From IMG/VR virus record IMGVR_UViG_3300042261_002390, positions 182,150 through 246,149 of that record: a stretch of DNA of 64,000 nucleotides. One strand, given 5' to 3'. Positions 3,541 to 64,000 of this stretch are shown here, piece by piece. The notes beneath the pieces are model-generated. The model did not search any database. It was given only the letters and a program-made list of their open reading frames with translations, and was not told the origin of the DNA. The position numbers and the translations under genes are program-made. Every line of letters starts with the position of its first letter. Position 1 is the first letter of the stretch.

Positions 3541-4935
3541 TTATTTTTCGTCGTCAGTATCTGCCCATTCAAGACCCGGACAGTAATCGGTGTAACTAGC
3601 ACTAAAATATTCACCAAAAATACCTGTACTACCATAAATTCCACGACCGATTGCACACAATCCACGCCAAACAGCCAATGCCAATGGTACTATAATTTTC
3701 ATAGCAAACCAAATTGCAGGTTTAATCAAGATGTATAGGAAGCTGTATGCAATACCCAATGCAACATATTTTATTGGGTAATATAACCAAATTAATGGCT
3801 CAACATACCAAACCTTTTTACCTGTTTTATACTTATTTACAATTTTTTGCCCGAAACCAATAATAAAGAAACCGATTAGATATGCAATACCAACAATTGA
3901 TAATCCCGCTAAAACATAAACATACAATAACCAATTAGTTGCTGACCAGTCAATAACAATTGTTAATAGGTGTGCAATTAAATTCACTATAAAGAATGAG
4001 GCTGTGAGAAAAAATAACGTAATCAATCCACCAACGAACTGTTTAGTTCTTCTGATGATGTTCTTCCAATCTAAATCAAATGTGAATGCATCAACAAAAA
4101 AATCAATTAGTTTATTCAATGCATTATTAATTGGTTTCATTCTAGCATCCCATTTTTCTTTCTTGATTGCTTCTTTACGTTCAATTTCTCGTTGTTTAAG
4201 AAGACGTTTTTGGTAATCTTCTCGTTTTTTCGCATTAATTTGCGTACTCCATGCGTTCCACTTTAATTCAAGTTCTTTTCTTTTTCCCAAGTATTCTTTT
4301 TGATTAGTACCATATTCTAAGCCATACTTTTCAAGCAGAAAATAATTTAGAATATCGGTGTCTTTGTTTTTTAAATAAAACTTGGCTGTTGTAGGCAATT
4401 TTAAATTACCCCTGTAATAGTACTCGTAGACTTCTTCTTCTTCAATACTTAACAACCAGCTATTAATGAATTTTTCCAGTGACCAGATTAAAATTCTTGG
4501 GAAAAGCATGATTAGCGAATATATAACTTCCCCAATCACTTTAAATGGAACAACTAAAACTGAAAAAATCAGCAACCAAAAGTACGGACAGCCATTTTGC
4601 ATAGTTTTAGGTGTCGGAGCATTTGAGCCAAGCACGTATTTCACCAAACGATAGTGCCATGATTTCATGCTTACACGCATCAATTTAGGCTTTTCTGCCT
4701 GAACAATGTACGCATCATCGCCAGTTTGAAGGTAAATTTTACTGTTTAATGATAACGAACCAACAATAGTTTCAACTACTTTAATATAGTAGCCTTCATA
4801 GTCTTTGTAAAGGAAGCCTTTACAATACAAGATGTTAGGTTTGTTGAATTCAACAACCTTATTCATCAATAACTCTAATTTTTCAAGTTTGTCGGTAATG
4901 TTTCCGACAACAGCTTTTTTAGTTATTTTTCCCAT
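3541..4935 (-). CDS. multi-pass membrane protein with central coiled coil
   Basis: 464 aa; several TM stretches and a charged K/E/R-rich helix. Confidence 0.75.
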   Translation of the reverse strand: MGKITKKAVVGNITDKLEKLELLMNKVVEFNKPNILYCKGFLYKDYEGYYIKVVETIVGSLSLNSKIYLQTGDDAYIVQAEKPKLMRVSMKSWHYRLVKYVLGSNAPTPKTMQNGCPYFWLLIFSVLVVPFKVIGEVIYSLIMLFPRILIWSLEKFINSWLLSIEEEEVYEYYYRGNLKLPTTAKFYLKNKDTDILNYFLLEKYGLEYGTNQKEYLGKRKELELKWNAWSTQINAKKREDYQKRLLKQREIERKEAIKKEKWDARMKPINNALNKLIDFFVDAFTFDLDWKNIIRRTKQFVGGLITLFFLTASFFIVNLIAHLLTIVIDWSATNWLLYVYVLAGLSIVGIAYLIGFFIIGFGQKIVNKYKTGKKVWYVEPLIWLYYPIKYVALGIAYSFLYILIKPAIWFAMKIIVPLALAVWRGLCAIGRGIYGSTGIFGEYFSASYTDYCPGLEWADTDDEK

Positions 4936-6650: not shown

Positions 6651-7226
6651 TTATTTTAATTCTGGATGTAATTTATTCCAGATTTTTGTACAATAGTTTA
6701 TTTGAAACCTACAATCATCTAAAGGATGGTGTTCAGTACCTATGTTAGGTTCATTAGCTTTAATCTCCGGCGAGAAGAATTCGAATGTTCTGACATCAAG
6801 TTCTTTTCTAAAATCCCAAGGTATTGCTTCATAATTCCATAAAACATATGCATCCTTAAGTATTCCGCAGTCAAATCTAGGACTTCTGCCGTAAACATAT
6901 ATATCCTTACCGCCTATTTCGCCCATGTATGACTTGAATTTTTCCAGAACATTTTTTATGTTATCAGAAGGTTTGCACATTTCTTTACGTGCTTCTTCAT
7001 TTTGTTGAAGCCACCAATAGATTGTACTACCGTTAATTTTCATACCAGAGTTTAAACATGATTGAATATCAATTCTTTCATAGAAAGTTCTACCATATTC
7101 GCCAGTATTTAAATCAAATTCGACAGCACCTATTGATGTAATGACAGAATAGCTATCATTACCCATAGTTTCAAGGTCGAGCATTACGTGACCTAAATTT
7201 TTTTGAGGAAATCTTTTACTTACCAT
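6651..7226 (-). CDS. 3'-5' exoribonuclease (DEDD, Rv2179c-like)
   Basis: MLDLETMG, FDCGIL, HHPLDDC. Confidence 0.85.
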   Translation of the reverse strand: MVSKRFPQKNLGHVMLDLETMGNDSYSVITSIGAVEFDLNTGEYGRTFYERIDIQSCLNSGMKINGSTIYWWLQQNEEARKEMCKPSDNIKNVLEKFKSYMGEIGGKDIYVYGRSPRFDCGILKDAYVLWNYEAIPWDFRKELDVRTFEFFSPEIKANEPNIGTEHHPLDDCRFQINYCTKIWNKLHPELK

Positions 7227-11185: not shown

Positions 11186-11694
11186 GCTGCCGTTTTATTT
11201 TTCTCGATATTGACGGGGTGATAGCTACACCAAAAACGGTAGAGCATGGAATGTGGGCTTTAACACCTGAAAAACAAGATTTACTTGGAATGATAATAGA
11301 AAAAACAGGTGCAAAGATTGTGCTTAGTAGTAGCTGGCGAAAACATACAATTGAAGATACTATTGAACACATGAAAGAACATGGGTTTAGATTCTGTGAT
11401 GAAATTGTAGGCATAACAATTAGAGCTTATCAATATTTACAAAAAGGCGTTCATTTATCAATTCCGAGAGGTGTAGAGATTAAGCAATGGATTGATACGA
11501 ATATTCATTCAAATAATGGTAAAGATTGGAACAGAAAGGAATTAGGCAAAGATTGGAATTATGTGATTTTGGATGATGATTCCGATATGCTTTTAGAACA
11601 CAAAGATAATTTTATATGTTGCGATTCAATGGAAGGTTTAACTCTCGAACAAGCAAACAAAGCTATCGAGGTGCTTTCTTACGGTTGCAGCTAA
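11122..11694 (+). CDS. HAD-family phosphatase (HAD_SAK-like); start lies inside the attC-like site
   Basis: FLDIDGV, LSSSWR and ILDDD motifs; the N-terminus MNTNNLSNESENPILRIGAVSCC is encoded by the palindrome. Confidence 0.8.
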   Translation: MNTNNLSNESENPILRIGAVSCCRFIFLDIDGVIATPKTVEHGMWALTPEKQDLLGMIIEKTGAKIVLSSSWRKHTIEDTIEHMKEHGFRFCDEIVGITIRAYQYLQKGVHLSIPRGVEIKQWIDTNIHSNNGKDWNRKELGKDWNYVILDDDSDMLLEHKDNFICCDSMEGLTLEQANKAIEVLSYGCS

Positions 11695-37291: not shown

Positions 37292-38227
37292 ATGAGAAAA
37301 AACGCATTAACCGTCAACGATGGTTTAAGTCTGTCACAGGCACAATCAATTTCAAACCTTTGTAACCAAAGAGCAAGAGAAATTGACACAACACTTGAAG
37401 GTATTAATAACTGTTCAAAATCAGTTGCAGTCGATGGAAATTCGCTGAATATTATGGTGGGTAAAAAAATTCCATCAAATGTATTGGAACTTCTTCTTGA
37501 AAAGTCCGAGTTGCATGGATGTCAGGCATTTTTGATGGAAAACATTAAGGCTAAAGACCTTATGATTAAGGAAATGCAAAAATCGAAAGCTGACATTTCT
37601 TCTGTTGAAATTCCTGAAAAACCTGTTGTGTTAAATGCAGCACCAGTTCTTCTTCGTGAAGTTAGTGAAGAATGGGGTTGGGAACAACTCACATCTGCAG
37701 ACCTTGCTAAGTATTACGAAGCAGAAGCATATGCTGCCCATATTGGTCAGTTTATTCATGCGGGGTCAACTTTGGATAATTTGAGAAAAGAATTACCACG
37801 TATTGTTCCTGTTGAGTGGATGACTATTGTGGAAGGAAAGAAAAGTCCTGTTAAAGTAACAGTACACCACACTTCAGCAGAATTGCTTGAAATTCACGAA
37901 AAACTCGCTGCCGAACACCGTAAATACGAACAGGTAGTGAATTACTACAAGGCAAAGGTTAAAAACCTTGTTACCGAAGAAAATGCACGTATTGCCAAAT
38001 TGAATGCCGATGTTCAGCATAACATTCAAAAGCAAAACAATGACAATCAGCTTGTCTACGAAACCGGAGTAAAAGCTGCTAACGAAAAAATCAGAACCAT
38101 TCAGTTGGATTACGAAAAACTCCGTCAGGATGAAATCAAAAAGATTGCTTCAATGCGTATATCGGTTGACGCTAGGTTTCAAAAGGTTGTTGATATTTTT
38201 CTCGAAAAATTAGAGCCTGAGAAATAA
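37292..38227 (+). CDS. coiled-coil-rich hypothetical protein
   Basis: 311-aa ORF with strongly biased codon usage. Confidence 0.8.
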   Translation: MRKNALTVNDGLSLSQAQSISNLCNQRAREIDTTLEGINNCSKSVAVDGNSLNIMVGKKIPSNVLELLLEKSELHGCQAFLMENIKAKDLMIKEMQKSKADISSVEIPEKPVVLNAAPVLLREVSEEWGWEQLTSADLAKYYEAEAYAAHIGQFIHAGSTLDNLRKELPRIVPVEWMTIVEGKKSPVKVTVHHTSAELLEIHEKLAAEHRKYEQVVNYYKAKVKNLVTEENARIAKLNADVQHNIQKQNNDNQLVYETGVKAANEKIRTIQLDYEKLRQDEIKKIASMRISVDARFQKVVDIFLEKLEPEK

Positions 38228-44253: not shown

Positions 44254-44801
44254 TGAAGGAGCAGAAATATAAATTAGTTGAAAAAGCATATTGTATTGAT
44301 TTAATTCGTATTAAACATGGATATGAATATTCTCTAGTAGTTTGTCACGCAAAAAACCTGAACGCAGCTAAATCGATTATCTATAAATTGATTAAAAACG
44401 AGGGAATGGAAAACTGCTATGATGAACCAATATCACTCGCAAATATTCCGGTTATTAGATATGAAAATTCAGACCACTATTTTTTCGAAAATAAGATTAT
44501 GACTCTTAGGGAAATTAATGGTACTGTTAAAGAAAGACTAAGGATAGCTAAACTCGAACGATTGTTGAATGATGAATCAATTAAATTCTGCCACATTTGT
44601 AAACATGGTTCGTATTATCGCCCAAATTCTGCCGGATATACCGATTATCTTTCTCGTGCAGGTGTATATGAAAAAAAGGAAGCGATTGAGCATGCCAGAC
44701 GTTGCGATGAACTATCGCTAATCCCTATCAATATTGAAACCCACAACAAATTAATATACGATGAAATTAAAGATTTGCAGTTATTATTAATTTCTGAATA
44801 A
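44253..44801 (+). CDS. hypothetical protein
   Basis: 182 aa; YYRPNSAGYT motif. Confidence 0.7.
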   Translation: MKEQKYKLVEKAYCIDLIRIKHGYEYSLVVCHAKNLNAAKSIIYKLIKNEGMENCYDEPISLANIPVIRYENSDHYFFENKIMTLREINGTVKERLRIAKLERLLNDESIKFCHICKHGSYYRPNSAGYTDYLSRAGVYEKKEAIEHARRCDELSLIPINIETHNKLIYDEIKDLQLLLISE

Positions 44802-44805
44802 TAAT

Positions 44806-44832
44806 TGTAACATTTAATACATTTCATACGTA
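44806..44832 (+). promoter_or_regulatory. ECF-type promoter TGTAAC-N17-CGTA
   Basis: Recurrent intergenic motif. Confidence 0.65.
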
Positions 44833-44857
44833 GAAGAGAAAAACAAATTAAAATTAT

Positions 44858-47764: not shown

Positions 47765-47775
47765 TTGCAAATAAT

Positions 47776-47802
47776 TGTAACCTTTTCATTAATACAAACG
47801 TA
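47776..47802 (+). promoter_or_regulatory. ECF-type promoter TGTAAC-N17-CGTA, upstream of the CRISPR locus
   Basis: Recurrent motif, 10 nt upstream of scaffold 1. Confidence 0.7.
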
Positions 47803-47812
47803 TAAGAAAAAA

Positions 47813-47982
47813 GTTCATTGAAAATATTAAGTATTTGCATATTTTATTATGCAAAGTGCGTGTTGTGACGCACATAGTGATTCTCGAAGAGACGAGAATG
47901 AGTTTAAACTCAGGGAAATTTCCACTCACTAACAACCAACAAATTTGTATGTTGTTATTTGTCAACACGTTATAGATAATAT
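47813..47982 (+). ncRNA. tracrRNA-like scaffold 1 (also serves as array leader)
   Basis: Near-duplicate of 49604-49776; hairpin loop GTTGTG (47862-47867) complements repeat end CACAAC; TGTCAAC (47960-47966) complements repeat GTTGACA. Confidence 0.8.
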
Positions 47983-48243
47983 GGTGTAACTAATCACAAT
48001 TTGAGAGGTTGACACAACGCTAGTCCGTAAACCCACCCCCCCAAAGGCGGTGTAACTAATCACAATTTGAGAGGTTGACACAACGCAAGCTATCAACACT
48101 AAAAAAATAATATGGTGTAACTAATCACAATTTGAGAGGTTGACACAACCAGACAGAATTACTTAAAGGTGTAACTAATCACAATTTGAGAGGTTGACAC
48201 AACTTCGGATGACCTTTAGGTGGTGTAACTAATCACAATTTGA
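47983..48243 (+). CRISPR. CRISPR array 1: 4 full 36-nt repeats plus one truncated; spacers 30, 29, 18, 18 nt
   Basis: Repeat GGTGTAACTAATCACAATTTGAGAGGTTGACACAAC at 47983, 48049, 48114, 48168; first 22 nt only at 48222. Confidence 0.93.
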
Positions 48244-48261: not shown

Positions 48262-49602
48262 ATGGAAAATTATTGTATTAAAACAAGAAAGATTACGATA
48301 ATTCCTTCAGGGGATAATCGGAATGATGTTTATTCGTATATTCGAAAAATGGCATCAGATTTAGCAAGAATTGGTAATGGCGTGATTAGGCTTCACTTTA
48401 ACAATCAATACGATATTGATGAAATATCGAAGTCACGTAATATTACTAAGTCGGATGCAAAGAAATTTGTTGAAGAAAAGCTTGGTACGTCAATTCGTAA
48501 TTCTGGTTATCAATCATTGACTGAGTTGATTGACATATCTTCAAATATTCGCACATCGTTTAATTCATTGATTTTTAAAACAACACAAAATAATTTCTTT
48601 GATGTTTTAACGGGGAAAATGAGTATTCCTTCATTCAGGAAGACCAACATCAATATTCCGTTTCAATTTAAGGGAGATGCTCCGTTTAGTCTGGATGAAA
48701 AAGAATACTATTATTTCAATTTACCCTCAACCAAACACACTAAAGAAACAATCGGTGAACTGAAATTATCGTTGTTCTTTGGAAAAGATAGAAGCAATAA
48801 TCGTATTATTGTCGAACGCATTCTTAGTGGCGAATATGAAATATGCGATAGCTCAATTCAAGTAAAGGATAAAGATTTGTTTTTGTTGCTAACATATAAA
48901 CAGCCAATAAGCGAAAAGCTATTAAAACCTGAAAAAGTAATGGGTATTGATATCGGCATTAATCGTCCGGTAAGTTTTTACATCAGTGATGAAAAACATC
49001 AGCCAAGACAGTTTAATCTTAACGAGCATATACAGCATGAGAGGCTTAAATTGTTGAAACAAAGAAAATCGCTTCAACAATCATTAAAATTTTCTGTTGG
49101 TGGTCATGGTAGAAATCGAAAATTAGTGGCACTGAATGTATTAAAAGAAAAAGAATTACGTTGGGCAAAAAATAAGAATCATCAAATCACTAAAGCAATT
49201 ATTGATATTGCGCTACAGTATGGTGTTGGGGTGATTAAAATGGAAGATTTGACTGGTATTACTCAAGATACTAAAAATTATTTCTTGAAGTCTTGGGCAT
49301 ATTATCAACTGCAAAGCTTCTTGGAATATAAAGCCAAATCCTATGGTATTAAAATCTTATGGGTTGACCCAAAAAATACGTCTAGAACATGTCCTGTTTG
49401 TGGTAATGTCGATAAAGAAAACAGACATAGCACAGTCTTTAAATGTGTAAATGAATCATGTCCAGACCACGATGTTGAAAAAGATGCCGATATTGTCGCA
49501 GCTTTGAATATATCAAAATCAATTGGTTCTGATGTGAAACCTAAATCGAAAAAGGGAATTATCAGTGCTAAGACAAAACAAAAAGATATTGTTGAAGCAT
49601 AA
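48262..49602 (+). CDS. cas12f: compact type V effector, Cas12f-like (TnpB-derived RuvC nuclease)
   Basis: RuvC D230 (GIDIG), E328 (MEDL), D410 (DAD..AALNI); Zn finger CPVC/CVNESC; GGHGRNRKL and ERILSGEY segments typical of Cas12f1; flanked by two arrays. Confidence 0.88.
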   Translation: MENYCIKTRKITIIPSGDNRNDVYSYIRKMASDLARIGNGVIRLHFNNQYDIDEISKSRNITKSDAKKFVEEKLGTSIRNSGYQSLTELIDISSNIRTSFNSLIFKTTQNNFFDVLTGKMSIPSFRKTNINIPFQFKGDAPFSLDEKEYYYFNLPSTKHTKETIGELKLSLFFGKDRSNNRIIVERILSGEYEICDSSIQVKDKDLFLLLTYKQPISEKLLKPEKVMGIDIGINRPVSFYISDEKHQPRQFNLNEHIQHERLKLLKQRKSLQQSLKFSVGGHGRNRKLVALNVLKEKELRWAKNKNHQITKAIIDIALQYGVGVIKMEDLTGITQDTKNYFLKSWAYYQLQSFLEYKAKSYGIKILWVDPKNTSRTCPVCGNVDKENRHSTVFKCVNESCPDHDVEKDADIVAALNISKSIGSDVKPKSKKGIISAKTKQKDIVEA

Positions 49603-49603
49603 C

Positions 49604-49776
49604 GTTCATTGAAAATATTAAGTATTTGCATATTAATTATGCAAAGTGCGTGTTGTGACGCACATAGTGACTTGTGAATAAACACAAGGGTTAATAAATA
49701 ACCGGAAGCTATGCTTCACTCACTAACAACCAACAAAATTGTATGTTGTTTTATGTCAACACGTTATTGGTAATAG
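49604..49776 (+). ncRNA. tracrRNA-like scaffold 2 (also serves as array leader)
   Basis: Starts 2 nt after the cas12f stop; same hairpins as scaffold 1 with compensatory changes; GTTGTG loop 49652-49657, TGTCAAC 49754-49760. Confidence 0.8.
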
Positions 49777-50241
49777 GTTGTGACAAGACACAATTTTTGG
49801 GGTTGACACAACACTACCGAGTTTGAGCAACGATGTGAAGAAGTTGTGACAAGACACAATTTTTGGGGTTGACACAACAACTGTTCAGTAGCTATTGTAG
49901 ATGAACTAGTTGTGACAAGACACAATTTTTGGGGTTGACACAACTAGTGCTTTATAGCTGCCGAAGTGATTTCAGTTGTGACAAGACACAATTTTTGGGG
50001 TTGACACAACACAAGGATGACTGGTTTTTTCTTTGCTGGTTGTGACAAGACACAATTTTTGGGGTTGACACAACAGCATGATGACAGGCAAAACAGTCGA
50101 TTTTGTTGTGACAAGACACAATTTTTGGGGTTGACACAACAGATTAACAACGAAGAATGGATTACGAGCAGTTGTGACAAGACACAATTTTTGGGGTTGA
50201 CACAACTATAAGGGCAATATCGTTCTGATAAGACACAATTT
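49777..50241 (+). CRISPR. CRISPR array 2: 7 full 36-nt repeats plus a degenerate terminal repeat; spacers 30, 30, 30, 28, 30, 30, 15 nt
   Basis: Repeat GTTGTGACAAGACACAATTTTTGGGGTTGACACAAC at 49777, 49843, 49909, 49975, 50039, 50105, 50171; partial copy at 50222. Confidence 0.96.
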
Positions 50242-50299
50242 CGAATATGTTTTGTATTTATAAACAACACAGTTTGAATAGTTGATACAACATACAATC

Positions 50300-52005: not shown

Positions 52006-52020
52006 ATAACATCAATATTT

Positions 52021-52047
52021 TGTAACATTTCAATAGGTTTATTCGTA
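52021..52047 (+). promoter_or_regulatory. ECF-type promoter TGTAAC-N17-CGTA
   Basis: Recurrent intergenic motif. Confidence 0.65.
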
Positions 52048-52086
52048 TTATATAAAAACGAATAAACCTTTTTAACATTTTTGACT

Positions 52087-62943: not shown

Positions 62944-63690
62944 ATGGTTGAAGTATTAATTCATTATTCAGTCAACAATTCACAGCTAACAATTGATGTG
63001 AATAAACAATCGTTCAAAAATTCAACGAACGAAAATGTTGCCAAATATTTAAAGGGTGTGTATCGTAACGATGATGAGTTTAAAACCTTCATCGAAAAGG
63101 TAAGTAAAATTCGTGAAGAACACAAAGAATTTGACGTGAGGGACTTCGTAAAGGAATTTGAAACACTTTACAATGAAGCTAAACCCTTCACATATAAAGA
63201 AGCTTTTGCTATCGAAGATAATGCGTTCAAAGCATTGGTATTTGGTAGTATCGATGTTGGTGAAATGATTCAAAATTTAGGTGCTACTCGTCTCAAAACC
63301 GATGGTAAAGAATCTGTTCAGAAATTATTCGATAAACAAGGTAATTTCTTGGGTACAACAAACATTACCAACGTCTATGAAGTCTACGAAGTCAATGGCG
63401 AACAACTTGGCGTTACCGAAAAGCTTTATGCTTTAAAATGTTGGTGTACTTCAACAAGCAACGAACACTGGTTGTGGATTGAAGAAAATTACAAAGACCA
63501 ACCATTGGAAGCCGTAGCATCTACCTTCCGTATTCATTCCGACTTGATTGATAAAATCAAAGAAATTAAACGTCAGGGTGATGTTTTATTGGTCGAAATC
63601 AAAGAAGAATTCAAGGATTATGAACCTACTGGCGAAATCGTGCCGTTAACTGCTGACCAATACTTTGGATTGCTTACTACTCAAGCATAA
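62944..63690 (+). CDS. hypothetical protein (C-terminus DUF6745-like)
   Basis: 248 aa; LYALKCWCTSTSNEHWLWI motif. Confidence 0.75.
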   Translation: MVEVLIHYSVNNSQLTIDVNKQSFKNSTNENVAKYLKGVYRNDDEFKTFIEKVSKIREEHKEFDVRDFVKEFETLYNEAKPFTYKEAFAIEDNAFKALVFGSIDVGEMIQNLGATRLKTDGKESVQKLFDKQGNFLGTTNITNVYEVYEVNGEQLGVTEKLYALKCWCTSTSNEHWLWIEENYKDQPLEAVASTFRIHSDLIDKIKEIKRQGDVLLVEIKEEFKDYEPTGEIVPLTADQYFGLLTTQA

Positions 63691-63769
63691 TAGTGAAAAC
63701 AAAAATATTTTATTTTTGTAGGTATTATAAAAACATTTATTATATTTGTAGCAAATTAATTTCATAACT

Positions 63770-64000
63770 ATGGAAAAAGTTATCTTAGAAAAATCGACCA
63801 ACACACATGTTCTCGAATCTGAAACAAGTGTAGATGTAAAAAATCTTGACGAATCAACACTCTTGTTAAAAGTTAAAGGTAAAGGTGTCGTTACTCATGG
63901 TCAACATGGTACAGTTGTTACTGAATCTCCTACTGTTATCAAATACGTACAGAAGGAATTGAATCCGGTGACAAGGATGATGCAAAATGCATACGACTAA
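63770..64000 (+). CDS. small beta-rich hypothetical protein
   Basis: 76 aa; HVL...VTHGQHG...QKELNPV; TATATTTG box at 63741. Confidence 0.7.
   Translation: MEKVILEKSTNTHVLESETSVDVKNLDESTLLLKVKGKGVVTHGQHGTVVTESPTVIKYVQKELNPVTRMMQNAYD

What the first reader, a model, noticed from the sequence alone, without database searches (positions are those of the whole stretch)
49777..50241. Arrays look built by a host type II-C/VI-B-style adaptation module acting in trans
Seen: 36-nt repeats with mostly 30-nt spacers. The array 2 repeat has GTTGTG...CACAAC terminal complementarity. Degenerate repeats lie at the distal end in both arrays, so new spacers appear to enter next to the scaffold. No adaptation genes are in the window. 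Established: 36-nt GTTG...CAAC repeats with 30-nt spacers are typical of Bacteroidota type II-C and VI-B arrays, and VI-B arrays can be expanded by II-C Cas1-Cas2 in trans. Inference: the phage type V locus has adopted repeat ends compatible with host Cas1-Cas2, and the tracr scaffold also serves as leader.
Basis: partly seen in the sequence, partly recalled or inferred. Interest (0 to 1): 0.6.

Follow-up and report, generated by a model that had tools for sequence, protein, structure and literature searches.

The report
Phage Cas12f array lacking adaptation genes
This is a real CRISPR array, one of two flanking a miniature Cas12f nuclease gene in a giant freshwater phage that carries no spacer-acquisition genes in the part sequenced; borrowing the host's acquisition enzymes is plausible but unproven, and nothing shows they are of the proposed II-C type.

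Summary
Window 49777-50241 holds seven identical 36-nt repeats (GTTGTG...CACAAC) with spacers of 30, 30, 30, 28, 30, 30 and 15 nt, then a truncated, degenerate eighth repeat. A sister array lies at 47983-48243. The two arrays flank cas12f (48262-49602; catalytic residues intact). Each array is headed by its own copy of a conserved structured scaffold RNA.

No Cas1, Cas2 or Cas4 was found in the 246-kb record. About 84 kb of the parent contig is unchecked.

- **For:** the 36/30 geometry and a CACAAC repeat end match Bacteroidota type II-C arrays sampled here. Spacers are compositionally foreign. In related phages spacer content turns over, with some change at the slot next to the scaffold.
- **Against:** this phage's arrays are identical in every sample. 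The host is unidentified. No genome holds an array with this repeat core. Similarity to II-C repeats stops at the terminal hexamer, which is also explained by pairing with the scaffold loop. No protospacer was found, so no PAM. A II-C-type PAM would sit 5 nt from where Cas12f needs one. Relatives also show recombination and deletion.

Verdict: a new variant of a known kind, of moderate interest.

The parts
47775..47806 (+). Promoter-like phage motif (TTGTAAC, 16 nt, ACGTATAAG) upstream of module 1
   Evidence: Recurs three times in 44-52 kb of the window (family D6). ACGTATAAT-type boxes precede scaffolds or units in relatives L007 and L068. Function is inferred.
47813..47982 (+). Scaffold 1: tracrRNA/omega-RNA-like structured RNA gene, directly upstream of array 1 and in the same orientation
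   Evidence: 85-93% identical to scaffold 2 (D3, D7, D9). In the alignment of 17 family scaffolds, 10 of 20 predicted pairs keep pairing through changes on both sides. The first hairpin starts at 47856.
47983..48243 (+). CRISPR array 1: four 36-nt repeats plus a truncated fifth (48222-48243); spacers 30, 29, 18, 18 nt
48262..49602 (+). cas12f (446 aa, P0001): RuvC D230/E328/D410 and a CxxC...CxxxxC zinc finger are present
   Evidence: NCBIfam guided_TnpB 1.6e-53. Pfam Cas12f1-like_TNB 1e-18. PDB 9NZO/9NZR, the best-matching Cas12f chains deposited with the Al3Cas12f/OsCas12f/RhCas12f study, 3.5e-55. Motif positions. It is the only copy in the record.
49604..49776 (+). Scaffold 2: second copy of the tracr-like RNA gene, abutting array 2 in the leader position
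49777..50241 (+). CRISPR array 2 (the finding): seven 36-nt repeats; spacers 30, 30, 30, 28, 30, 30, 15 nt; degenerate truncated eighth repeat at 50222-50241
   Evidence: Pooled spacer GC is 39% against 31% for the genome (p about 0.003). No second copy of any spacer exists in the record.
49789..49812 (+). Putative crRNA handle: the 3' 24 nt of each repeat (shown for the first repeat of array 2), shared by both arrays
   Evidence: Shared pattern CACAATTTNNGRGGTTGACACAAC. The last six nt are complementary to the scaffold hairpin loop GTTGTG. GGTTG is complementary to CAACC, which follows the invariant CCACTCACT of the scaffold. Both relations differ together between clades (sequence reading). 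Duplex energy alone is not significant.

Best explanation
Window 49777-50241 is the downstream one of two functional-looking CRISPR arrays that flank a catalytically intact cas12f gene in a giant freshwater phage. The phage is at least 340 kb, has 31% GC, and its translation signals resemble those of Bacteroidota.

Each array is transcribed from, and immediately follows, its own copy of a roughly 170-nt structured scaffold RNA (tracrRNA/omega-RNA-like). The last 24 nt of each repeat is the guide handle that pairs with that scaffold. The following 18-30 nt guide Cas12f, most likely against competing phages.

The regular 36+30 geometry, the family-wide conserved G(T/G)TGT repeat start that the mature guide does not need, the foreign composition of the spacers, and spacer turnover in sister phages all indicate that a Cas1-Cas2 integrase built the arrays. 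No such gene is found in the phage DNA examined. The integrase is therefore most likely supplied in trans during infection, with insertion at the scaffold-repeat junction.

A Bacteroidota type II-C module is the best single candidate on geometry, prevalence and the shared CACAAC end, but the donor type is not established. In this particular phage the arrays appear static.

Shown: the anatomy, the Cas12f identity, scaffold conservation and covariation, absence of cas1/2/4 in 246 kb plus 10 kb, and turnover in relatives. Inferred: guide function, targets, trans-acting integrase, donor type.

Rough odds: Cas12f tracr-led array 0.95; built by an integrase acting in trans 0.55-0.6; that integrase being II-C 0.3.
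For: Anatomy.

Effector.

Scaffold: 17-sequence alignment with three helices, 10 of 20 pairs compensatory. The loop/repeat-end pairs are GTTGTG/CACAAC in the window against GTTGTA/TACAAC in L068, L173 and L188.

No Cas1/Cas2/Cas4. Nothing in the next 10 kb. No cas gene within 2-6 kb in relatives.

Foreign spacers. No self-targets.

Turnover: phages with Cas12f 90-94% identical share no spacers. A population with 99.8-100% identical Cas12f has four array haplotypes, and H1 and H4 differ only in the scaffold-adjacent spacer.

II-C candidacy: Cas9 occurs in 69 of 401 sampled Bacteroidota genomes, against 1 for Cas12a and 1 for a Cas12f homolog. II-C arrays have 36-nt repeats, 29-30-nt spacers and a CACAAC end. 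In-trans use of II-C Cas1 by a cas1-less array has been shown experimentally (PMC8092290).

Bacteroidota-like host: no Shine-Dalgarno enrichment (4%, equal to background) and A-rich positions -14 to -10.
Against: Arrays are identical in two JGI samples, and matching pieces occur in a third study, so no acquisition is seen in this phage.

About 84 kb of the parent contig is unread.

The host is unidentified. No bacterial or archaeal genome of 185,579 species has an array with this repeat core (49 single hits, about the roughly 70 expected by chance).

Interior repeat similarity to II-C equals shuffles.

The CACAAC end is independently explained by scaffold pairing.

A II-C-derived PAM lies at -9 to -6 in guide orientation, not adjacent as Cas12f needs.

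No protospacer was found. The one 20-nt seed hit is probably chance.

Relatives show mosaic arrays and deletions. Some relatives have irregular minimal units that an integrase would not make.
Confidence: 0.5

Rival explanations
1. The arrays are effectively inherited cassettes. They were built elsewhere, in an ancestor or relative that had access to an integrase. They now change only by recombination, deletion and exchange between co-infecting phages, and this phage does not acquire spacers.
For: Arrays are identical across samples for this phage and for every same-protein pair examined. There are clear recombination and deletion products. L191's first repeat is a hybrid of two neighbouring repeats, so a spacer was lost by repeat-repeat recombination. 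Spacer s07 is linked to two different distal blocks. A contig joins scaffold 1 to array 2 content. Distal units are decayed and shortened.
Against: Complete spacer replacement at 6-10% protein divergence needs a source of new spacers somewhere. The seven perfect 36-nt repeats of array 2 look young. H1 and H4 differ only at the scaffold-adjacent slot, the classical mark of polarized gain.
Confidence: 0.2
2. The phage encodes its own adaptation module (cas1-cas2, with or without cas4) in the part of the genome not examined.
For: The IMG/VR record is cut ('provirus', 75% complete). The parent contig is 339,914 bp and continues with phage-like small ORFs. About 84 kb is unread.
Against: There is none in 246 kb plus 10 kb. 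There is none next to cas12f in any of more than 12 related loci. The 1.7-Mb MAG G227 has no Cas1; it includes a 248-kb phage-like contig carrying a homologous locus. From my own knowledge, phage CRISPR systems generally lack adaptation genes.
Confidence: 0.12
3. Spacers are supplied in trans, but by an integrase that selects T-rich 5' PAMs (a type V-A or V-F Cas4-Cas1-Cas2 module of the host or of another mobile element), not by II-C.
For: Cas12f needs an adjacent 5' PAM. The closest solved relatives use T-rich PAMs (PMC13186708). A II-C PAM is offset by 5 nt. From my own knowledge, type V adaptation modules pick compatible PAMs and V-A repeats are also 36 nt.
Against: Cas12a occurs in 1 of 401 and a Cas12f homolog in 1 of 401 sampled Bacteroidota genomes, against Cas9 in 69 of 401. 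The one cellular Cas12f locus examined also lacks adjacent cas1/2.
Confidence: 0.13
4. Guides are renewed without Cas1-Cas2, by a recombination or copy mechanism acting on 'handle plus guide' units inherited from the omega-RNA ancestry of the system.
For: Relatives have scaffolds fused directly to handle plus guide. Some have units with only a 14-26-nt conserved handle and irregular spacing (L007, G227). The scaffold-fused first guide also differs between relatives.
Against: Array 2 has exact 36-nt repeat copies and 28-30-nt spacers, which a ruler-type integrase explains best. The irregular units can be explained as decay of the repeat 5' half, which the guide does not need.
Confidence: 0.05

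Closest known systems
Type V-F1 CRISPR-Cas12f (closest solved chains: 9NZO/9NZR, from the Al3Cas12f/OsCas12f/RhCas12f study)
   Same: A 446-aa TnpB-like RuvC plus zinc-finger effector (3.5e-55 to 9NZO). A long structured tracr-type scaffold. A 36-nt repeat whose 3' end pairs with the scaffold. The guide lies 3' of the repeat.
   Different: It is encoded by a giant phage. Two arrays, each with its own scaffold copy, flank the gene. The scaffold directly abuts the array in the leader position. There is no cas1/cas2/cas4. PAM and activity are untested.
Type VI-B array of Flavobacterium columnare extended in trans by II-C Cas1 (Hoikkala et al. 2021, PMC8092290)
   Same: A cas1-less array with 36-nt repeats, 30-nt spacers and a GTTGT motif at the leader-distal repeat end. 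It is transcribed from the leader into the array. A Bacteroidota context is likely.
   Different: The effector is DNA-targeting Cas12f, which needs an adjacent PAM, whereas VI-B tolerates the displaced II-C PAM. The array is on a phage, not in the same chromosome as the donor. No donor system, shared PAM or strain-level leader-end variation is shown for this phage.
CRISPR-Cas systems of huge phages that lack adaptation modules (CasPhi/Cas12j and others; named from my own knowledge of Al-Shayeb et al. 2020 and Pausch et al. 2020)
   Same: A compact type V effector plus short arrays on a phage genome above 200 kb, no cas1/cas2, and presumed use against competing elements.
   Different: The effector here is Cas12f-like and tracr-dependent, whereas CasPhi needs no tracrRNA. 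It has dual scaffold-led arrays.
TranC, transposon-CRISPR intermediates (Jin et al., Cell 2025, doi 10.1016/j.cell.2025.09.004; cited in PMC13565253)
   Same: The family contains close relatives in which the scaffold is fused to handle plus guide like an omega-RNA, and others in which scaffold and repeat are split.
   Different: In the window the scaffold is not fused to a guide. There are no transposon ends or tnpA. The effector groups with Cas12f. I could not read the TranC paper itself.
Cas12 hacker, a phage-encoded miniature Cas12 (bioRxiv 10.1101/2025.01.20.633832)
   Same: A phage-borne miniature Cas12 with a tracrRNA, a 37-nt repeat, and a pseudoknot between the repeat 3' end and the tracrRNA.
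   Different: It is a different protein family and uses thioredoxin as a cofactor. No relationship was tested here.

Membership tests
Type V-F (Cas12f) CRISPR-Cas | Effector of 400-700 aa with a TnpB-like split RuvC domain and a zinc-finger TNB domain | tested here: met
   Pfam PF07282 1e-18; NCBIfam guided_TnpB 1.6e-53; PDB Cas12f chains to 3.5e-55. D230/E328/D410 and the CxxC...CxxxxC motif are present.
Type V-F (Cas12f) CRISPR-Cas | CRISPR array next to the effector gene | tested here: met
   Two arrays lie 18 bp upstream and 174 bp downstream of the gene.
Type V-F (Cas12f) CRISPR-Cas | tracrRNA with an anti-repeat and a pseudoknot to the repeat 3' end | tested here: inconclusive
   The scaffold is conserved and structured, with compensatory changes. 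Loop and repeat end, and anti-repeat and repeat, differ together between clades (sequence reading). Duplex energy is not better than shuffles (z about -1.2). There is no RNA data.
Type V-F (Cas12f) CRISPR-Cas | PAM-dependent dsDNA targeting (5' T- or C-rich PAM) | not testable with these tools
   No protospacer was found.
Type V-F (Cas12f) CRISPR-Cas | Own adaptation module (cas1, cas2, cas4), present in many but not all V-F loci | tested here: not met
   Negative in the 246-kb record. No hit in the next 10 kb. 84 kb is unread.
Cas1-less array extended in trans by a II-C module (F. columnare VI-B model) | A II-C system (cas9-cas1-cas2) is present in the same cell | not testable with these tools
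   The host is unidentified. There is only indirect Bacteroidota-like signal. Cas9 occurs in 69 of 401 sampled Bacteroidota genomes.
Cas1-less array extended in trans by a II-C module (F. columnare VI-B model) | Repeat and spacer lengths equal to those of the donor arrays | tested here: met
   12 of 18 sampled II-C arrays have 36-nt repeats, and spacers are 29-31 nt in 17 of 18. This matches a class of systems, not an identified donor.
Cas1-less array extended in trans by a II-C module (F. columnare VI-B model) | Shared leader-distal repeat motif (GTTGT on the opposite strand) | tested here: inconclusive
   The phage repeats end in CACAAC, as do 11 of 18 II-C repeats. The same hexamer is complementary to the scaffold loop, and the rest of the repeat is no more similar than shuffles.
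Cas1-less array extended in trans by a II-C module (F. columnare VI-B model) | Protospacers carry the donor's PAM (upstream TTTANNNNN in guide orientation in F. columnare) | not testable with these tools
   No protospacers were found. The PAM geometry comes from PMC8092290.
Cas1-less array extended in trans by a II-C module (F. columnare VI-B model) | Spacer content varies between strains at the leader end | tested here: not met
   This phage is identical in all samples. In a related phage population the scaffold-adjacent slot does vary (s01, s07 or none), but recombination and deletion occur as well.
Type VI-B CRISPR-Cas | Cas13b effector | tested here: not met
   The only effector at the locus is Cas12f.
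TranC / omega-RNA-CRISPR intermediate | Scaffold fused to a guide (omega-RNA-like), used together with CRISPR units | tested here: not met
   In the window the scaffold is followed by a 34-nt linker and a full repeat, with no fused guide. Fused forms exist in relatives L007, L070, L173, L183, L185, L187 and L113.

The most novel reading that the evidence does not exclude
A family of giant freshwater phages carries Cas12f loci in which the tracrRNA gene itself is the CRISPR leader. Close relatives alternate between a natural single guide (scaffold fused to handle plus guide) and a split scaffold plus array. This would catch the omega-RNA to tracrRNA/crRNA split among living relatives. The arrays would grow at the scaffold-repeat junction by hijacking the host's II-C Cas1-Cas2 during infection, which would make this a DNA-targeting phage CRISPR system that depends on host adaptation.
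Probability: 0.2. Interest if true: 0.75.

Novelty: new variant of a known kind. Interest (0 to 1): 0.5.

Why it matters
If phage arrays are extended by host integrases, phages can update their own weapons against rival phages using the immune machinery of the cell they infect. That would be cross-talk between a virus-borne type V system and a host type II system, so far shown only between two systems of one bacterium.

The family also offers natural fused and split guide-RNA architectures around a 446-aa nuclease. This bears on how CRISPR arrays arose from TnpB omega-RNAs and on the design of compact genome editors.

As it stands, the firm result is more modest. This is a well-formed phage Cas12f locus with two scaffold-led arrays and no adaptation genes in the DNA examined, and the source of its spacers is open.

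Tried and rejected
- Rfam and tRNA scans of the window found nothing.
- blastn of the locus and of both arrays against GenBank phages found no match. The same was true for arrays of three relatives.
- Exact 20-nt spacer-prefix scans of IMG/VR: three spacers gave no hits. The sixth spacer of array 2 hit 28 contigs, but only the first 20 nt match. The hits lie in two unrelated genes, terminase-like and portal-like, both encoding INNEEW. I judged this probably a codon-level coincidence, so no PAM could be taken from it.
- Repeat-pattern scans gave no hits in viral contigs or metagenome contigs or single, chance-level hits in viral contigs and species genomes.
- Reads: only Logan contigs from freshwater, lake and wastewater runs were available. 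They break at the repeats, show the same spacers and contain no RNA.
- BLAST of the locus against 401 Flavobacteriaceae genomes found no spacer targets and no similar arrays. It found one homologous locus on a 248-kb phage-like contig of a MAG, which is not accepted as host evidence.
- A cellular Bacteroidota Cas12f locus (G487) was examined as a comparator. It also has no adjacent cas1/2, and its repeat is unrelated to ours.
- A scan for degenerate terminal repeats in II-C arrays, meant to fix leader polarity, was uninformative apart from one locus.
- RNAduplex of scaffold against repeat was no better than shuffles.
- A Cas13b direct-repeat sequence recalled from memory was not found in the paper library and was not used as evidence.
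- The idea that the short 18-nt spacers regulate the phage's own genes was rejected for this phage, because no second match exists in the 246-kb record.
- The parent contig could not be searched by handle. One contig look-up failed.

Full report
**What is there**

The window is the last 64 kb of a 246,149-bp IMG/VR virus record. The same sequence lies on a 339,914-bp JGI metagenome contig and on a 32-kb contig from a second sample.

At 49777-50241 there are seven identical 36-nt repeats, starting GTTGTG and ending CACAAC. Spacers are 30, 30, 30, 28, 30 and 30 nt. A 15-nt stretch follows, then a 20-nt truncated copy with two substitutions.

A second array lies at 47983-48243. It has four identical 36-nt repeats and a 22-nt truncated fifth, with spacers of 30, 29, 18 and 18 nt. 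The two repeat types differ in their 5' part but share the 3' 24 nt. No other array or scaffold copy exists in the record.

**The effector**

Between the arrays lies a 446-aa ORF (48262-49602).
- It matches the RNA-guided TnpB family (1.6e-53) and the Cas12f1-like TNB domain (1e-18).
- It matches solved Cas12f structures. The best is 9NZO/9NZR at 3.5e-55; these chains were deposited with the study of Al3Cas12f, OsCas12f and RhCas12f.
- The RuvC triad (D230, E328, D410) and the zinc-finger cysteines are in place, so an active nuclease is expected.
- The newly identified Cas12f-MG119 family that includes Al3Cas12f uses T-rich 5' PAMs (PMC13186708).

**The scaffold**

Each array is preceded, on the same strand, by a copy of a roughly 170-nt element (47813-47982 and 49604-49776; 85-93% identical).

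I aligned 17 such elements from this and ten related loci. They share two 6-bp hairpins and a long-range helix, and 10 of 20 predicted pairs keep pairing through changes on both sides.

The loop of the first hairpin is GTTGTG in the window, complementary to the repeat end CACAAC. In relatives whose repeats end TACAAC the loop is GTTGTA. The stretch after the invariant CCACTCACT is CAACC in the window, where the repeat has GGTTG. It is ATACCTTT in the relatives, where the repeat has AAAGGTAT.

This is the pseudoknot plus repeat:anti-repeat layout described for Cas12f, TnpB and other miniature Cas12 RNAs. The register rests on these clade-level co-changes only, because duplex energies are not better than shuffles and no RNA run holds the locus.

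The scaffold thus occupies the place of a leader. In array 2, 34 nt separate its last conserved part from the first repeat.

**Phage and host**

Neighbouring genes hit phage families: RNA ligase, endolysin and unknown-function PHROGs. The parent contig continues beyond the record's end with small ORFs that have no family, so the 'provirus' cut looks like an artefact.

The runs that hold the sequence are freshwater and lake metagenomes.

The record has 31% GC. It shows no Shine-Dalgarno enrichment (4%, equal to background) and has A-rich positions -14 to -10. From general knowledge this fits Bacteroidota and their phages. It is the only host evidence.

A homologous locus on a 248-kb contig of a Flavobacteriaceae MAG looks like a mis-binned phage, and I do not count it.

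**Adaptation genes**

Cas1, Cas2 and Cas4 profiles find nothing in the 246 kb, while the control genomes ring. The next 10 kb has no Cas hit. None of more than a dozen related loci has a cas gene within 2-6 kb. About 84 kb of the parent contig could not be read.

In one sample of 401 Bacteroidota genomes:
- 69 have Cas9;
- 1 has Cas12a;
- 1 has a homolog of this Cas12f.

Of 20 cas9 loci fetched, 18 have arrays.
- Twelve have 36-nt repeats, one has 44-nt repeats and five have 46-nt repeats.
- Spacers are 29-31 nt in 17 of the 18.
- Eleven repeats end exactly in CACAAC, which reads GTTGTG on the other strand.

Hoikkala et al. (PMC8092290) report the following for F. columnare. II-C and VI-B repeats are both 36 bp and share GTTGT at the leader-distal end. 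New spacers are mostly 30 bp. VI-B acquires spacers through II-C Cas1.

So the premise is sound. The phage repeats share length, spacer length and the leader-distal hexamer with II-C arrays.

The resemblance stops there.
- II-C repeats carry the motif at one end only.
- The other 30 positions match the phage repeats no better than shuffled sequence: 8-12 of 30, against 8 with a standard deviation of 2.4.
- The hexamer is already required for pairing with the scaffold loop.
- No array with the phage's repeat core occurs in one genome each of 185,579 species: 49 single hits, about the roughly 70 expected by chance.

**Are the arrays dynamic?**

For this phage, no. Both arrays are identical in two JGI samples, and the pieces present in a third study carry the same spacers. 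The same holds for every pair of contigs that encode an identical Cas12f. These are near-clonal copies, so the test is weak.

Over slightly longer distances turnover is complete. Four phages whose Cas12f proteins are 90-94% identical share no spacers.

One population has 99.8-100% identical Cas12f, 54% identical to ours. It shows four array haplotypes:

| Haplotype | Order from the scaffold | Loci |
|---|---|---|
| H1 | s01 s02 s03 s04 s05 s06 | L188, L194 |
| H2 | s07 s02 s08 s09 s10 | L189, L190, L195 |
| H3 | s02 s08 s10 | L191 |
| H4 | s07 s02 s03 s04 s05 s06 | L197 |

- H1 and H4 differ only in the spacer next to the scaffold, which is the classical sign of leader-end gain.
- H2 and H4 share the first two spacers and differ distally, which needs recombination.
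- H3's first repeat is a hybrid of two H2 repeats, so it lost s07 by repeat-repeat recombination.
- These are short-read assemblies, so a chimeric path cannot be fully excluded for H4.

Polarity toward the scaffold is therefore suggested in relatives but not clean, and it is not shown for this phage.

**Spacers and targets**

Pooled spacer GC is 39% against 31% for the genome (p about 0.003). No spacer has a second match in the record. The spacers are therefore foreign.

No protospacer was found in GenBank phages, in IMG/VR prefix scans or among the held loci.

One spacer's first 20 nt match terminase-like and portal-like genes of freshwater viral contigs, but the last 10 nt do not. Both genes encode INNEEW there, so I treat the match as probable coincidence. 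Hence there is no PAM.

[quoted passage not shown] Cas12f needs an adjacent PAM. Only a minority of such spacers would work unless the donor's PAM differs.

**Conclusion**

An integrase acting in trans is the best explanation for how such arrays arise in a phage without cas1/cas2. A Bacteroidota II-C module is the best single candidate on geometry and prevalence.

The specific claim that the repeat ends were adopted for that module is not demonstrated. For the 3' end it has a simpler explanation in scaffold pairing. Static inheritance with recombination, an unseen phage-encoded module, and a T-rich-PAM donor all remain open.

Noticed in passing
L007:7740-7960; window 37292-38227: In a relative (Cas12f 74% identical) the last array unit has its own ACGTATAAT-type promoter. 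Its 18-nt guide equals codons about 12-18 of the gene immediately downstream. With 1-2 mismatches it also equals the homologous window ORF 37292-38227. It could serve self-regulation or targeting of sister phages; the PAM status is unknown.
   Followed up: partly
L007:7434-7562; L070:6390-6517 and 6883-7011; L173:3921-4042 and 4432-4557: In several relatives the scaffold ends directly in a repeat-3'-handle followed by a guide, a natural single-guide RNA like an omega-RNA. Ordinary repeat-spacer units follow. The window, L067, L068 and L188 have the split form. Both forms occur among close relatives.
   Followed up: partly
L113:9780-9990 and 11340-11560 (G227 contig C1): A 248-kb contig binned into a 1.7-Mb Flavobacteriaceae MAG carries a cas12f (54% identical) flanked by two scaffolds. 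Their units keep only a 14-nt handle and have irregular spacing. The MAG has no Cas1. The contig is probably a mis-binned giant phage.
   Followed up: partly
window 48150-48167, 48204-48221, 50207-50221: The distal spacers are short (18, 18 and 15 nt) although the flanking repeats are intact. Similar 18-20-nt spacers occur in relatives (L070, L188 s03). This is about the guide length that Cas12f uses, so shortening may be tolerated.
   Followed up: no
window 48019-48048: The first spacer of array 1 has 63% GC and a run of seven C, very unlike the 31% GC phage. Its source is probably a quite different genome.
   Followed up: no
window 50280-50291: AGTTGATACAAC differs from the repeat's 3' handle at two positions. 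It lies after the truncated last repeat, ten bases before the ATG of the next small ORF. It may be a decayed further unit.
   Followed up: no
window 44800-44857, 47770-47827, 52015-52072: A motif recurs before genes and before scaffold 1: TTGTAAC, about 16 nt, then ACGTA or TCGTA. Related ACGTATAAT boxes occur in relatives. It is likely a phage-specific promoter.
   Followed up: no
window 63690-64000; L115:10748-20747: The IMG/VR record ends here as a 'provirus', but the parent 339,914-bp contig continues with dozens of small ORFs that have no family hits. The boundary looks like a classification artefact, and the phage is at least 340 kb.
   Followed up: partly
L180:1608-1917 versus L173:3847-4860: One contig joins scaffold 1 directly to the contents of array 2. 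This is either a deletion between the two scaffold copies or an assembly collapse. Duplicated scaffolds make the locus prone to such events.
   Followed up: partly
L118:8942-9430 and L121:9006-9373 (genome G487): A cellular Bacteroidota Cas12f (37% identical) is also a stand-alone gene plus array. Its repeat starts GTTTCA, like the repeat of the Cas1-linked array elsewhere in the same genome, which also has a II-C locus. It is a possible cellular case of an orphan Cas12f array matched to a resident adaptation module.
   Followed up: partly
window 50141-50160; L072-L099: The first 20 nt of the sixth spacer of array 2 are identical to a stretch encoding INNEEW in terminase-like and portal-like genes of 28 freshwater viral contigs. 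The remaining 10 nt do not match.
   Followed up: yes
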